A DNA stretch of 63,395 nucleotides, filler included, from Octopus bimaculoides (lineage: Eukaryota), in NCBI RefSeq assembly GCF_001194135.2. It is 9 parts of 8 records of this genome, joined end to end, with 100 filler letters (N's around TTAATTAATTAA, not from the genome) between each part and the next. Parts side by side here need not be neighbours in the genome. Positions count along the whole stretch, not along the records: positions 37,362 to 44,903 come from NC_069009.1; 8 more parts are not named here. The stretch is one strand, 5' to 3'. The notes below the pieces were generated by a model. That model did not search any database. It saw nothing but the letters and a program-made list of their open reading frames with translations, and was not told where the DNA came from. The translations under genes and the position numbers were made by a program. The first letter of the stretch is position 1. Each line of letters opens with the position of its first letter. Shown here piece after piece: positions 41,490 through 45,679 of the stretch.

Positions 41490-41869
41490 ATAAAAAGATA
41501 GACAGACAGATAATCCAATAGATGGATGGATAAACAGGAGGTTAGATAGATAAATAGATAGATGGATAAACAGATAGGTTGATAGATAGATAGATAGATA
41601 GGTAGATAGACATGTAAATAGATAGACAGACAGACAGAGTGAGAGAGAGAGAGAGACAAATGGATGGATGGATGGATAGATAGGCAGATAGATAGATAGA
41701 TAGACAAAGAGATAAACAGATAGATACATACAGACAGATAGATAGATAGGCAAGTAGACAGACAGACAGACAGACAGATAGATAAATAGACAGACAGATA
41801 GATAGATAAATAGACAGACAGATAGATAAATAGACAGACAGATAGATAAATAGACAGACAGACAGATAA

Positions 41870-41949
<80 letters not shown>

Positions 41950-41990
41950 GTAGATAGATGGATAGATGGATAGATGGACAGACAGACAGC
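41490..41990. repeat. Compound (GATA)/(GACA)/(GATG) microsatellite inside an SLC38A10 intron
   Basis: Read directly from the sequence. Confidence 0.95.
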
Positions 41991-42002
41991 GCTCTGACTT
42001 AC

Positions 42003-42185
42003 CTTCGGGAACAACATCGTATAAAGACTGGTACGGCAGGGAAATATGATGAGGGGGAAGGTGACAGCAATGGAAAGGACAAAGCTCAGCTTCACCATGT
42101 CCGTGAAGAAAGTCGGGACCAGCATGTTGATTATGTCACCTGTAATCTCGATATTACAGAATGCTATGTAGCCAAAAAAACCAAC
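42003..42185 (-). CDS. SLC38A10: SLC38A10 internal exon (VGFFGYIAFCNIEITGDIINMLVPTFFTDMVKLSFVLSIAVTFPLIIFPCRTSLYTMLFPK), 183 nt, phase 0 to 0
   Basis: Boundaries are cttgcag|GTT and AAG|gtaagt. Carries the VGFFGY and FP..I.PCR motifs of SLC38/AAAP transporters. Confidence 0.95.
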
Positions 42186-42189
42186 CTGC

Positions 42190-43330
42190 AAGAGACAAGA
42201 GGTGAGAGGTACATTGTTAGCTGCCTGTGGTGAAGAAACAAGGTACCTGGTACCAATATGCATATGAACATACCCTGATGTAGTGAAAAACAGCTACAAC
42301 GTGCAAGAGGTGAGGTACATCGTTAGCTGTCTGTGGTGAAGAAACAAGGTACCTGGTACCAAGATGCATACGAACATACCCTGATGTAGTGAAAAACAGC
42401 TACAAAGTGCAAGAGGTGAGGTACAGCTGTGAAAGAAAAGAGATAAGGTCCCAGATACCAATATATAGACAATGTGTCCTGGTGTCTCTATTTACCCAAA
42501 AGTAGCAATAAAAGAAGGGAAAAACAGCCATCTGTAGAGAACGAGGTACCTGGTACCAACATGTGGACGAACATACCATGGTGTCTTCATGTACACAAAA
42601 GCAGTTGCATGAGAAAGGCAAGGTGCATATTTTGTCTGTGGTAAAGAAACAAGGTACCTGCAACCAACATGCAAATGAATTTACCCTGAAGAAACAGCTA
42701 TAAAAGAAAAAAGGTACAGTACGTGGTACCAACATGTAGATGACATAATCTGGTATCTATATGTACCCCAAAAGAGTTGCAAAACAGGTGAGGTGTATAT
42801 TTATCTATAGTGAAAGAGGTACCTGCTACAAACATGTAGCTGATGTGCCCTGGTACCTGTAAGTGCCTAAAAACAGATGCAAAAGAGGTGAGGTACATTC
42901 TATCTGTATTGATGGAGGTACTTGCTCCCATGACATGGCTGATGGGCCCTGGTACCTATATGTATCTAAAAATAGATGCAAAAAAGGTGAGGTACATTCT
43001 ATCTGTAGCGAAGGAGGTACTTGCTACAAACATGTGGCTGATGTGCCCTGGTACCTGTAAGTGCCTAAAAACAGATGCAAAAGAGGTACATCGTTAGTCA
43101 TTTGTAATGAAGAAAGAAGGTACTTGGTACCAGCATGTGAATGAACATACCGTGGTACTTCTATGTGCCCAAAAAAAGCTGCAAGAGAAAAGAAGTGAGG
43201 TACATAGTTGTCTGTAGCAAAGGAGGTACCAACATGATGTACCCTGAATCAAAAAGCACCAGTATGAGAAGAGGTGAAGTGAAACCAGTAACTGGAAAAG
43301 GGTACCTGGTACCAACATATACACACAGAC
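42190..43330. repeat. Degenerate tandem array, about 100-120 bp unit, about 10 copies, rich in ggtacc
   Basis: Recurring tgcaa(a)gaggtgaggtac...aaggtacctggtacca motifs fill most of the SLC38A10 intron. Confidence 0.9.
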
Positions 43331-43382
43331 AGACTGGTACATATACAGACAGTATGAAGGGACCGAGGTAAATAGAACTTAC

Positions 43383-43485
43383 CAGAAGGTAGGCAACGGA
43401 GCAGATATTTACAGCACTGCTTACAATCTTATTGATGACATTGAAGGAAGGTTCTGGAAGCTCATCATAAAGCAGGAACAACTGG
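43383..43485 (-). CDS. SLC38A10: SLC38A10 internal exon (QLFLLYDELPEPSFNVINKIVSSAVNICSVAYLL), 103 nt, phase 2 to 0
   Basis: Boundaries are ttccag|C CAG and CTG|gtaagt. The 34 codons align with recalled human QVLPTYDSLDEPSV...TFYVM. Confidence 0.93.
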
Positions 43486-43568
43486 CTGGAATAATAGATG
43501 TGAAGAGTGTGGCGTGGGTGGAAGGCCTGAGAGAGAGAGAAAGATTAAAGTTCTGTGTGTGCGTGTGC

Positions 43569-43609
<41 letters not shown>

Positions 43610-43649
43610 TACATATATATACATACACACATGCAGATTTTTATTCTTT

Positions 43650-43856
43650 TATTCTTTTACTTGTTTCAGTCACGTGACTGTGGCCATGCTGGAGCAGCGC
43701 CTTTAGTCAAACAAAATCGACCCCGGGACTTATTCTTTGTAAGCCTAGTACTTATTCTATCGGTCTCTTTTTGCCGAAACGCTAAGTTACAGGGACGTAA
43801 ACACACCAGCATTGGTTGTCAAGCGATGGTGGGGAGGGACAAACACAGACACACAA

Positions 43857-43889
<33 letters not shown>

Positions 43890-44058
43890 CATACATATAT
43901 ACGACGGGCTTCTTTCAGTTTCCGTCTACCAAATCCACTCACAAGGCTTTGGTCGGCCTGAGGCTATAGTACAAGACACTTGCCCGAGGTGCCATGCAGT
44001 GGGACTGAACCCACAACCATGTGGTTGGAAAGCAAGCTACTTACCACACAACCATGCC
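43650..44058 (-). mobile_element. Full-length CORE-like tRNA-derived SINE with internal (TA/TG)n
   Basis: Head aggcatggttgtgtggtaag, B-box-like ggttcagtccc, CORE-like segment, microsatellite, 3' module ending gaaacaagtaaaagaataaaa. Confidence 0.85.
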
Positions 44059-44395
44059 TGTACCTATGTATATACATGCTGAATATGATACATATATGTG
44101 AGCATGCGGAGAGCCAGAGTCATGCAAAAAAAATGCACCTGGTCCACTTTGTAAAGTGGCTGGCATTGGAAGGGCATCTAGCTGTAAAAACCCTTGCCAT
44201 AGCAGATACTGGAGCACGATGCAGTCCTTGGGGCCTACTAGATCATACCGAAACCTTGCAACCCATGCCAGCAACGAACATGGGTGTTAAACGATGACAA
44301 TGAAAAAGAAAAAGAGATTGAGATAAAAACCGTAATGAGAGGTGAGATGAGGTGTGACAGACGGGAAGGGGCGTGAATGATTGCCTTCTACTCAC

Positions 44396-44517
44396 GTTTG
44401 ACATCCAAAAGCCAGTGAAAAGATTGGTATACATTGGAAGAAGCCATCCCATCTCCAATACCTCACCTGCACAACCCAGTCGTTCTTCCACAGGTTTGGT
44501 AAAGACAGTAAGATCAT
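44396..44517 (-). CDS. SLC38A10: SLC38A10 internal exon (MILLSLPNLWKNDWVVQVRYWRWDGFFQCIPIFSLAFGCQ-T), 122 nt, phase 0 to 2
   Basis: Boundaries are tag|ATG and AC|gtgagt. The translation matches the human SLC38A10 segment as I recall it ([20 protein letters not shown]). Joins in frame to the 43485 exon. Confidence 0.92.
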
Positions 44518-44518
44518 C

Positions 44519-44569
<51 letters not shown>

Positions 44570-44775
44570 TATATATAACATACAGAAAATTGCACTACTG
44601 GGCACTGCACACATCCTACGCAAAACACTTTCAATACAGTAACCATAAGAGCATCATAGCAAACCACAGCACATACCCAAGGCACGCAGAGCTGTGCTCG
44701 GTAGGGAAGTGAAAGCACGTTATAAAAATAAAACTACTGAATAATAATAATAATAGTAATAATAATAATAATATT
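44570..44775 (+). mobile_element. 5'-truncated R4/Dong LINE 3' end between two (AAT)n tracts
   Basis: IQKIALLGTAHILRKTLSIQ-stop (RLE C-terminus), a short UTR and an AAT tail. Confidence 0.8.
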
Positions 44776-45679
44776 AATCATCATCGTCGTTTAACGTCTG
44801 CTTTCCATGCTAGCATGGGTTGGACGATTTGACTGAGGACTGGTGGACCAGGAGGCGACACCAGGCTCCAATCTGATCTGGCAGAGTTTCTACAGCTGGA
44901 TGCNNNNNNNNNNNNNNNNNNNNNNNNNNNNNNNNNNNNNNNNNNNNTTAATTAATTAANNNNNNNNNNNNNNNNNNNNNNNNNNNNNNNNNNNNNNNNN
45001 NNNATATACATATGCAATATATAAGTATATATATATATGCAATATATAAGTATATATATATATATATATATACATATACATATGTATGTATGTATGTATG
45101 TATGTATGAACAAGCCAACAAGTAACGAACACAAACCAAGCATCAACAACAAAAAAGACAAAAAAAAAGCCATATGCTTACTTCCTTTAGAAACATAACA
45201 CAGACCTTAGAGAAAAAAAATTGTCCAAATGCCACATTTTGTAACATCTTTCTCCACCAAAAACTGCCAAATTCTAATGAGATTTACATAAAGGAAATGC
45301 GCTACATAATTTATATAAGCTAATTTCCAGTAGATTTTTGGTTTTGTTTTTCATATTTGTTGTGATTTTCTTTTTTTTTTTTTTGCTTGATTGTTTAGTG
45401 GGTATCTTTAGTTTTCTTCATTTTCTTCATTGCTTTTTGGAGGGGGGGAGGTTATTTTTTTGAAAATACATTTACAAAATAATGGGTTTCCTGTGTTGTT
45501 GTTGTTGTTGCTGTTATTTTTTTTGTTATGTCTTTTTTTTTTGGTACTATTTCTTTATGGTCTTCTGTTTTCGCTTTGATTTTGTTAGTTTTGTTGTTGT
45601 TGTTGTTTTCTTTATTTTTTACTTCTTCATATTTCATCGTCTTGATCATAGTCATCAGCCCTCATCACCATTATGAACA

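What the first reader, a model, noticed from the sequence alone, without database searches (positions are those of the whole stretch)
42186..43330. SLC38A10 intron is a tandem array of copies of its own downstream splice-acceptor junction
Seen: on the minus strand the true junction reads gtacctctcacctcttgtctcttgcag|gttggtttttttggctacatag. The upstream repeat units contain degenerate copies of this intron end plus about 20 nt of exon: gtacctcacctcttgcaC-gttgtagctgtttttcactacatc (about 42300), cctgttttgcaA-ctcttttggggtacata (about 42778), ctcttttgcaT-ctgtttttaggcac (about 42878 and 43074), and ttcttttctcttgcAG|cttttttgggcacatag (43179-43180). Most copies have lost the AG at the homologous position (AC, AA, AT). 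At least two keep a strong YAG (43179-43180 and 42698-42699), and two have a new AG a few bases downstream. Inference: the acceptor region was amplified about 10 times and the decoys then decayed, possibly under selection against mis-splicing. The surviving sites could give cryptic exons, NMD-coupled isoforms or stepwise splicing.
Basis: partly seen in the sequence, partly recalled or inferred. Interest (0 to 1): 0.75.

Follow-up and report, generated by a model that had tools for sequence, protein, structure and literature searches.

The report
Intron built from copied splice-acceptor junctions
One intron of the octopus amino-acid transporter gene SLC38A10 consists almost entirely of about 12 decayed tandem copies of its own downstream intron-exon junction, a structure already described in amphioxus as a "mirage" minisatellite, so this is a neat but not new kind of thing.

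Summary
The piece is 100% identical to Octopus bimaculoides chromosome CM046629.1, and the gene is SLC38A10 (XP_052833760.1), on the minus strand.

The 1197-nt phase-0 intron (43382..42186) holds about 12 tandem units of roughly 100 nt (43345..42213). A 13th unit, in register, is the last 27 nt of the intron plus the first ~90 nt of the exon.

A profile of the intronic units hits the exon-only sequence, and 0 of 2000 dinucleotide shuffles reach that score. It finds nothing else in ~33 kb of octopus flank or 70 kb of mussel locus.

The exon peptide VGFFGYIAFCNIEITGDII is conserved across phyla, and the mussel has the same intron without an array. So the exon is ancestral, the intron is old, and the array is lineage-specific. 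Indels shared by all units indicate one decayed founder copy that was then amplified.

The claim that AG was lost under selection is not supported. The AG columns show 1 and 3 parsimony changes against a mean of 1.6, and every full-length unit still carries a strong pyrimidine-tract YAG.

RNA evidence could not be obtained. The closest known cases are amphioxus "mirage" minisatellites and the human F7 IVS7 VNTR. I file this as a new member of a known kind.

The parts
43383..43485 (-). Upstream exon (103 nt), encoding ..QLFLLYDELPEPSFNVINKIVSSAVNICSVAYLL and ending CTG|gtaagt.
   Evidence: Sequence; alignment to XP_052833760.1 / P0002.
43346..43382 (-). Donor GTAAGT plus about 37 nt of unique intron head. 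This is the only part of the intron that is not recognisably repeat.
   Evidence: The unit HMM gives no hit here; the array hits start at 43345.
42213..43345 (-). Array of about 12 tandem pseudo-junction units, listed high to low: 43343-43286 (partial), 43285-43204, 43203-43090, 43089-42996, 42995-42897, 42896-42797, 42796-42698, 42697-42627 (partial), 42626-42526, 42525-42425, 42424-42319, 42318-42213.
   Evidence: TRF, the repeat finder, MAFFT alignment, nhmmer E 1e-8 to 1e-26 per unit. Identities between units are mostly 54-75% (the partial first unit falls lower), 78-90% among the three 99-nt units, and 95% for the last pair.
42797..43089 (-). Younger sub-block of three roughly 99-nt units (78-90% identical). 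All three carry AT at the homologous AG position and a new tttttAG 8-9 nt downstream (43065, 42966, 42867).
42213..42424 (-). Youngest pair of 106-nt units (95% identical). Each has a CTAAC motif in its 3' tail, which lies about 28-30 nt upstream of the next acceptor, and each keeps a pyrimidine tract and gttgtAG|ctg.
42095..42212 (-). Terminal, functional unit: the last 27 nt of the intron (pyrimidine tract plus AG) and the first ~90 nt of exon B. It lies in register with the array.
   Evidence: HMM of the intronic units: 15.6 bits, E 7e-5 in the piece, 0 of 2000 shuffles; alignment.
42186..42187 (-). True acceptor AG, in the context ctctcacctcttgtctcttgcAG|G, with 84% pyrimidines upstream.
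   Evidence: gene models; same junction in Mytilus.
42216..42220 (-). CTAAC branch-point-like motif about 30 nt upstream of the true AG. It lies in the tail of the last intronic unit. Its role as branch point is inferred, not shown.
   Evidence: Motif scan.
42003..42185 (-). Exon B (183 nt, 61 codons, phase 0 at both ends): VGFFGYIAFCNIEITGDIINMLVPTFFTDMVKLSF...MLFPK, followed by the donor AAG|GTAAGT.
   Evidence: Mytilus has an exon with the same boundaries.
43179..43180 (-). Pseudo-acceptor that keeps the homologous AG (ttcttttctcttgcAG|c, 89% pyrimidines). Using it would add 993 nt and bring in a premature stop.
42294..42295 (-). Pseudo-acceptor that keeps the homologous AG (gttgtAG|c), with CTAAC 28 nt upstream. 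Using it would add 108 nt, in frame and without a stop (36 aa: LFFTTSGYVHMHIGTRYLVSSPQAANNVPLTSCLLQ).
42225..42226 (-). Acceptor-like site ttcttcaccacAG|g, derived from the exon sequence ttcttcacgg. Using it would add 39 nt, in frame and without a stop (AANNVPLTSCLLQ).

Best explanation
This is a locally generated intronic minisatellite of the 'mirage' type.

Proposed history:
1. The phase-0 intron between codons ..AYLL and VGFFGY.. is ancient.
2. In the octopod or cephalopod lineage, a segment of about 115-125 bp was duplicated in tandem. It spanned the 3' splice site (at least 27 nt of pyrimidine tract plus AG) and the first ~90 nt of the downstream exon.
3. Only the downstream copy stays joined to the rest of the exon, so the upstream copy became intron.
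4. That pseudo-copy lost about 4 nt at the exon start and 15 nt (codons AFCNI).
5. It was then amplified to about 12 units, probably by unequal crossing-over or replication slippage. Later local re-duplications produced three 99-nt units and two 106-nt units.

The array now makes up about 97% of the intron and most likely has no function of its own.

Splicing goes to the last unit. The likely reasons are that its acceptor has the best signal (an uninterrupted pyrimidine tract, CAG|G, CTAAC at about -30) and that it is the acceptor nearest to the consensus donor AAG|GTAAGT 183 nt downstream (exon definition).

Shown: the array, its homology to the exon, the direction of origin, the age of the intron, and the shared indels. 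Inferred: the amplification mechanism, the reason the true site wins, and neutrality.
For: - Array and register.
- Homology of the intronic units to exon-only sequence: 8.2 bits over exon positions 4-80, 0 of 2000 shuffles. This is above every background hit in the rest of the 46.6-kb octopus locus and in the 70-kb mussel locus.
- Exon peptide VGFFGYIAFC(N/D)xxIxGDI...F..D..KL is conserved in sequence and length in molluscs, insects and mammals, and Pfam Aa_trans covers it. The exon is therefore the source, not the product.
- Mytilus edulis has the same intron position and phase (AYLL|gtgagt ... ttttgtag|GTTGGATTTTTTGG), a roughly 1.9-kb intron and no ~100-nt array.
- All intronic units share gaps against the functional junction (42185-42182 and 42164-42150). 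They are also closer to each other (mostly 60-75%) than to the junction unit (54-65% for the ten near-complete units).
- Three independent gene models use the terminal acceptor.
- The same phenomenon has been published in amphioxus. Those arrays include the 3' end of an intron plus the 5' part of an exon and are reported not to disturb splicing (PMC3087553, PMC3902484).
Against: - No genome-wide search of O. bimaculoides for the unit was possible, so dispersal elsewhere is excluded only for 46.6 kb of this locus.
- No other octopod genome or protein was reachable, so the age and lineage of the array are inferred from divergence only.
- No RNA reads were available. Exclusive use of the terminal acceptor rests on gene models.
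- Two nearby pseudo-acceptors (42294, 42225) look competent and would keep the frame open, so 'no function' is not proven.
- Identity to the exon unit is only 54-65%, and the exact indel placement is ambiguous.
Confidence: 0.85

Rival explanations
1. The array works as a set of decoy or alternative acceptors. It would titrate U2AF/PTB-type factors or give NMD-coupled unproductive isoforms. The two nearest sites would give in-frame +13 aa and +36 aa protein isoforms, or the intron would be removed stepwise.
For: 12 pseudo-acceptors combine at least 70% pyrimidines with YAG. CTAAC motifs precede three acceptors. The sites at 42294 and 42225 give stop-free in-frame insertions, and all other sites give premature stops. 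The AG|GTACC and AGG|GTATGT motifs recur in the units.
Against: No RNA data were available. All three gene models use only the terminal site. There is no excess change at the AG columns, so no trace of selection on splicing signals in either direction. Apart from the true donor at 43382, the donor-like sites in the intron lack the GTRAGT core that all real donors of this gene have, and reach 7 of 9 matches at most. The intron is only 1.2 kb, so recursive splicing is unnecessary. Amphioxus mirages are reported not to affect splicing. A stop-free 39-nt or 108-nt insert is not improbable by chance.
Confidence: 0.1
2. The repeat is a dispersed satellite or a TE-internal tandem repeat that landed in the intron, and its resemblance to the junction is incidental.
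For: Octopus genomes are repeat-rich. The same piece holds SINE-like copies and a 145-nt tandem that do recur elsewhere in the locus.
Against: The unit HMM finds no copy outside the intron in the 46.6-kb locus. The similarity to the exon is colinear over about 90 nt of conserved coding sequence plus the acceptor, lies in register with the array, and is matched by 0 of 2000 shuffles.
Confidence: 0.04
3. The tandem duplication created the intron itself (Rogers-type intron gain from a duplicated AG|GT-containing exon segment).
For: The array fills nearly the whole intron. Mirage repeats have been proposed as a route to new introns (PMC3087553).
Against: Mytilus edulis has an intron at exactly the same codon boundary and phase, with no array, so the intron predates the array. 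The donor region shows no similarity to the unit.
Confidence: 0.02
4. The units encode a cluster of small RNAs (miRNA or snoRNA), or the array is an assembly artefact.
For: Units of about 100 nt in an intron with GGTACC palindromes. The whole-intron MFE has z = -2.5 against 40 shuffles.
Against: No Rfam family matches inside the array at E <= 1. Single units fold no better than shuffles, with z from -1.4 to +0.8. Units differ by 25-45% and carry private indels, which a mis-assembly would not produce. Only the copy number of the 95%-identical pair could be uncertain.
Confidence: 0.02

Closest known systems
Amphioxus 'mirage' minisatellites (Adh3, Canestro et al. 2002 NAR 30:2871; globin BflGb6/BflGb9, PMC3087553; TnC, presenilin, PGBD5, PMC3902484)
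   Same: Both are tandem, minisatellite-like duplications whose unit spans an intron-exon boundary. BflGb6 copies exactly the 3' end of an intron plus the 5' part of the next exon. The authentic junction is the terminal unit. Many copies keep AG/GT signals yet normal splicing is reported. Sub-blocks are homogenised and boundary units are excluded from that homogenisation.
   Different: The amphioxus arrays are young (81-100% identity), short (3-6 units) and polymorphic. The octopus array is old (mostly 54-75% identity), has about 12 units, shares derived indels, and fills about 97% of an ancient intron. The host is a mollusc. I found no report from cephalopods. Polymorphism and the effect on splicing were not testable here.
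Human F7 intron 7 37-bp VNTR (PMC1557585)
   Same: It is a minisatellite with one unit spanning an exon-intron boundary, so the authentic splice site sits next to a row of pseudo-sites that normally stay silent. The site adjoining the exon is the one used.
   Different: F7 is the mirror case, with donor rather than acceptor copies. Its units are 37 bp and the pseudo-sites are identical in sequence. Selection of the authentic site was shown experimentally there. Nothing was tested experimentally here.
Intron gain by internal tandem duplication of an AG|GT-containing segment (Rogers model, as cited in PMC3087553)
   Same: Both involve tandem duplication inside a gene that copies splice signals and turns former exon sequence into intron sequence.
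   Different: Here no new intron was created. The intron is shared with Mytilus, so the duplication only lengthened it.
Tandem exon duplication giving mutually exclusive exons
   Same: Both are local tandem duplication of exon-containing segments within a gene.
   Different: Only the 5' part of the exon was copied, without its donor. The copies cannot act as self-contained alternative exons, and they have lost the reading frame.

Membership tests
Mirage-type boundary minisatellite | Head-to-tail tandem repeats of minisatellite unit size | tested here: met
   About 12 units of 94-114 nt plus partial units.
Mirage-type boundary minisatellite | The unit contains both intronic and exonic sequence of one boundary, including the splice signal | tested here: met
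   The unit HMM matches 27 nt of intron, the AG and exon positions 4-80. 0 of 2000 shuffles reach the score. Alignment.
Mirage-type boundary minisatellite | The authentic boundary is the terminal unit of the array, in register | tested here: met
   The unit ending at 42213 is followed directly by GTACCTC.. at 42212, which starts the functional unit.
Mirage-type boundary minisatellite | Regular splicing is not disturbed | not testable with these tools
The only support is that three gene models join AYLL|VGFFGY.
Mirage-type boundary minisatellite | Length instability or polymorphism between haplotypes | not testable with these tools
   Only one assembly is held.
Dispersed satellite / TE-derived repeat | Copies of the unit at other genomic loci | tested here: inconclusive
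   None in the 46.6-kb locus L001 outside the intron. The whole genome could not be searched.
Rogers-type intron gain by tandem duplication | The intron is absent at this position in outgroups | tested here: not met
   Mytilus edulis has the intron at the same codon boundary and phase.
Recursive splice sites | A pyrimidine tract and AG juxtaposed to a consensus donor (AG|GTRAGT) inside a long intron | tested here: not met
   The AG|GT sites in the units read AG|GTACCT and have weak pyrimidine tracts. There is no GTRAGT in the array, and the intron is only 1.2 kb.
SLC38A10 / Pfam Aa_trans (host gene) | Match to PF01490 above the gathering score, and orthology to annotated SLC38A10 | tested here: met
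   47.6 bits against a cut-off of 25.6. 100% DNA identity to the locus of XP_052833760.1. Orthologues are named SLC38A10 across animals.
Intronic miRNA/snoRNA cluster | Rfam match or a hairpin more stable than shuffles | tested here: not met

The most novel reading that the evidence does not exclude
The roughly 12 retained pyrimidine-tract/YAG modules are used. The array would act as a tunable sink of decoy acceptors that sets the level of productive SLC38A10 mRNA through NMD-coupled mis-splicing. The two nearest sites (42294, 42225) would give in-frame +36 aa and +13 aa isoforms. Copy-number variation of the minisatellite would then modulate expression between individuals or species.
Probability: 0.08. 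Interest if true: 0.6.

Novelty: new member of a known kind. Interest (0 to 1): 0.33.

Why it matters
The locus shows that boundary-spanning ('mirage') minisatellites are not peculiar to amphioxus. They occur in a mollusc and can persist long enough to replace almost the whole content of an ancient intron, so they are one concrete route by which exon sequence becomes intron and introns lengthen.

It is also a natural cis-competition experiment. A dozen acceptor modules of graded strength sit upstream of one real acceptor, which could be used in minigenes or RNA-seq to study 3' splice-site choice in cephalopods.

As a single locus without transcript evidence, its importance is modest.

Tried and rejected
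- Orthologous intron in other octopods: two searches with the search for homologous proteins returned only O. bimaculoides models and non-cephalopod orthologues. The representative search gave the same picture. Look-ups for the Batillaria and Haliotis proteins found no contig on record.
- PDB sequence search: no hit.
- Exon-only blastn against the intron: only weak colinear HSPs, E 0.08. This was superseded by the profile test.
- Mussel exon B against the octopus unit HMM: no hit, because the sequences are too diverged at the DNA level.
- tblastn read-through of the donor into the first units: the extension is not convincing.
- Extension of the array to the donor: no HMM hit in 43420-43330.
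- Excess change at the AG columns: not found.
- RNA structure or small-RNA cluster: whole-intron z = -2.5, single units not significant, and no Rfam hit in the array.
- The Canestro 2002 paper (PMC117041) is not held, so it is cited only through PMC3087553.

Full report
**Locus.** The piece 37362-44903 is 100% identical over all 7542 bases to Octopus bimaculoides assembly GCA_001194135.2, chromosome CM046629.1. The gene lies on the minus strand. It is annotated as XP_052833760.1, 'putative sodium-coupled neutral amino acid transporter 10'. The exon peptides match Pfam Aa_trans at 47.6 bits against a cut-off of 25.6, and the orthologues found across animals are named SLC38A10.

The upstream exon is 43485..43383 and ends CTG|GTAAGT. 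The intron is 43382..42186 (1197 nt, phase 0). The downstream exon (exon B) is 42185..42003, which is 183 nt or 61 codons: VGFFGYIAFCNIEITGDIINMLVPTFFTDMVKLSF...MLFPK, followed by AAG|GTAAGT. Three independent gene models all join ..AYLL|VGFFGY...

**The observation.** TRF reports a 106-nt period (42196-42425, 94% matches) and a 99-nt period (42770-43087, 81%). The repeat finder reports 11 in-register copies of a 27-nt core spaced about 100 nt apart, and it links 42164-42206 (exon start plus acceptor) to 43161-43199. I segmented the intron into 12 units between 43343 and 42213, two of them partial. The next unit begins in register at 42212 and is the functional junction itself.

**Is it more than chance?** I built a profile HMM from the 12 intronic units only. 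Its scores were:
- Exon B alone, with no intron sequence: 8.2 bits over exon positions 4-80, against a best shuffle of 5.5.
- 42095-42212: 15.6 bits, against a best shuffle of 9.7.

In all three tests 0 of 2000 shuffles reached the observed score. As natural-sequence controls, the best hit outside the intron is 6.6 bits in the 46.6-kb octopus locus and 4.1 bits in 70 kb of the mussel orthologous locus.

The unit corresponds to about 27 nt of intron plus about 90 nt of exon, reaching ...ACATGCTGGTCCCGACTTTCTTCACGG. The coding origin is still visible after translation. Units read ..CWYQVPSFFITND or ..YWYQVPCFFTT where the exon reads ..NMLVPTFFTD.

**Direction of origin.** The exon-B peptide VGFFGY(I/V)AFC(N/D)xxIxGDI....F..D..KL.F is conserved in sequence and in length in bivalves, gastropods, insects and mammals. 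The exon is therefore ancestral and the intronic units derive from it.

The Mytilus edulis orthologue (locus L002) has an intron at exactly the same codon boundary and phase: AYLL|gtgagt ... ttatattttgtag|GTTGGATTTTTTGGTTAT. Its exon B has the same boundaries. That intron is about 1.9 kb and contains no ~100-nt array. So the intron is old, the array is a lineage-specific addition, and a Rogers-type origin of the intron itself is excluded.

**History of the array.** All intronic units share gaps against the functional junction. One is about 4 nt at the very start of the exon (42185-42182, exact placement ambiguous). The other is 15 nt at 42164-42150, which is exactly the codons AFCNI. The units are also closer to one another (mostly 60-75% identical) than to the junction unit (54-65% for the ten near-complete units).

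This points to a single duplicate that decayed and was then amplified, rather than ten separate copies of the true site. Later local events are visible as three 99-nt units (78-90% identical) and two 106-nt units next to the exon (95%). The most exon-like unit is the far upstream 43203-43090 (65%). That fits the known tendency of array edges to escape homogenisation, a pattern also described for amphioxus mirages.

The unit HMM finds no other copy in the locus. A genome-wide search was not possible.

**Splice signals.** The intron contains 55 AG dinucleotides. Twelve pseudo-acceptors combine at least 70% pyrimidines in the 19 nt upstream with YAG, and every full-length unit has at least one.

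At the position homologous to the true AG, 3 of 10 units keep AG (43180-43179, 42401-42400, 42295-42294). Three read AT, and these form one sub-family and hence probably one event. Two read AA and two read TG.

On a neighbour-joining tree of the units, Fitch parsimony gives 1 change for the A column and 3 for the G column. The mean is 1.63 per column over 38 columns, and 7 of those columns have 3 or more changes. There is no evidence that AG was hit preferentially. The three AT units have also gained a strong tttttAG 8-9 nt downstream.

The true acceptor does have the best-looking signal, with an uninterrupted tract ctctcacctcttgtctcttgCAG|G and CTAAC about 30 nt upstream. It is also the acceptor closest to the consensus donor 183 nt downstream. 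Apart from the true donor at 43382, the intron contains no GTRAGT donor. I infer, but have not shown, that signal strength plus exon definition explain its use.

If they were used, all but two of the pseudo-acceptors would introduce premature stops. The two nearest, 42294 and 42225, would add 108 nt and 39 nt in frame without a stop. That is not improbable by chance for inserts of this length.

**Rivals tested.** An RNA-gene cluster is unlikely. No Rfam family matches within the array, and single units fold no better than shuffles. The whole intron is only mildly more stable than shuffles (z = -2.5, 40 shuffles), which is expected from 18 copies of the half-palindrome GGTAC. An assembly artefact cannot explain units that differ by 25-45% and carry private indels.

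**Comparison with what is known.** The structure has a name. 'Mirages' are minisatellite-like tandem duplications spanning intron-exon boundaries. They were first described at amphioxus Adh3 and later found in globin, troponin C, presenilin and PGBD5 genes. BflGb6 duplicates precisely the 3' end of an intron plus the 5' part of the next exon. Splicing is reported as undisturbed even though many copies keep AG/GT (PMC3087553, PMC3902484). The human F7 intron-7 VNTR is the donor-side counterpart (PMC1557585).

The octopus array meets the structural criteria: tandem units, a unit that spans the boundary, and the authentic junction as the terminal unit. It differs in being old, long (about 12 units), marked by shared derived indels, filling about 97% of an ancient intron, and occurring in a mollusc. 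My literature searches found no cephalopod report. Undisturbed splicing and length polymorphism could not be tested.

**Verdict.** The core of the interpretation, amplification of the acceptor junction, is supported. The selective-decay part is unsupported and the splicing consequences are untested. This is a new member of a known kind, of moderate to low interest.

Noticed in passing
window 41488-41986: A (TAGA/TCTA)n microsatellite of about 500 nt fills most of the next intron, starting a few bases after the exon B donor. Exon B is therefore flanked by tandem arrays on both sides.
   Followed up: partly
window 37388-37415: Interstitial telomere-like repeat, (TTAGGG)-type hexamer x4.7 with 100% matches.
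   Followed up: no
window 43650-44070, 39606-39808, 40655-40796: Copies of a dispersed SINE-like element, 87-93% identical to several other places in the 46.6-kb locus L001. They translate to the recurring 'TGFFQFPSTKSTHKALVG' pseudo-ORF.
   Followed up: partly
window 39019-39380; L001 4579-4925: A 145-nt x2.5 tandem repeat with relatives elsewhere in the locus (period 116 there). Unlike the finding's array, this is a dispersed element with internal repeats.
   Followed up: partly
L001 43402-44107 (outside the piece): The last coding exon of the same gene is itself a 30-nt x23 coding tandem repeat (QQQAAQNVAQ motif). Orthologues in other molluscs also have Q-rich repeat tails.
   Followed up: no
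L001 10001-36615 (P0002 residues ~103-140 and ~176-183): The RefSeq model XP_052833760.1 contains stretches with no counterpart in orthologues, and the locus holds 13,236 N. The upstream part of the gene model is probably wrong.
   Followed up: no
window 43550-43600: Sub-threshold Rfam hits to mir-297, mir-466 and mir-3149 on both strands fall on a (TA)n/(TG)n microsatellite. They are low-complexity artefacts.
   Followed up: yes
window 42213-43345: GGTAC, often as the palindrome GGTACC or the doublet GGTACCAGGTACC, occurs 18 times in the intron. It arose at the site of the exon sequence GGTCCCG. Whether it promoted slippage or recombination is unknown.
   Followed up: no
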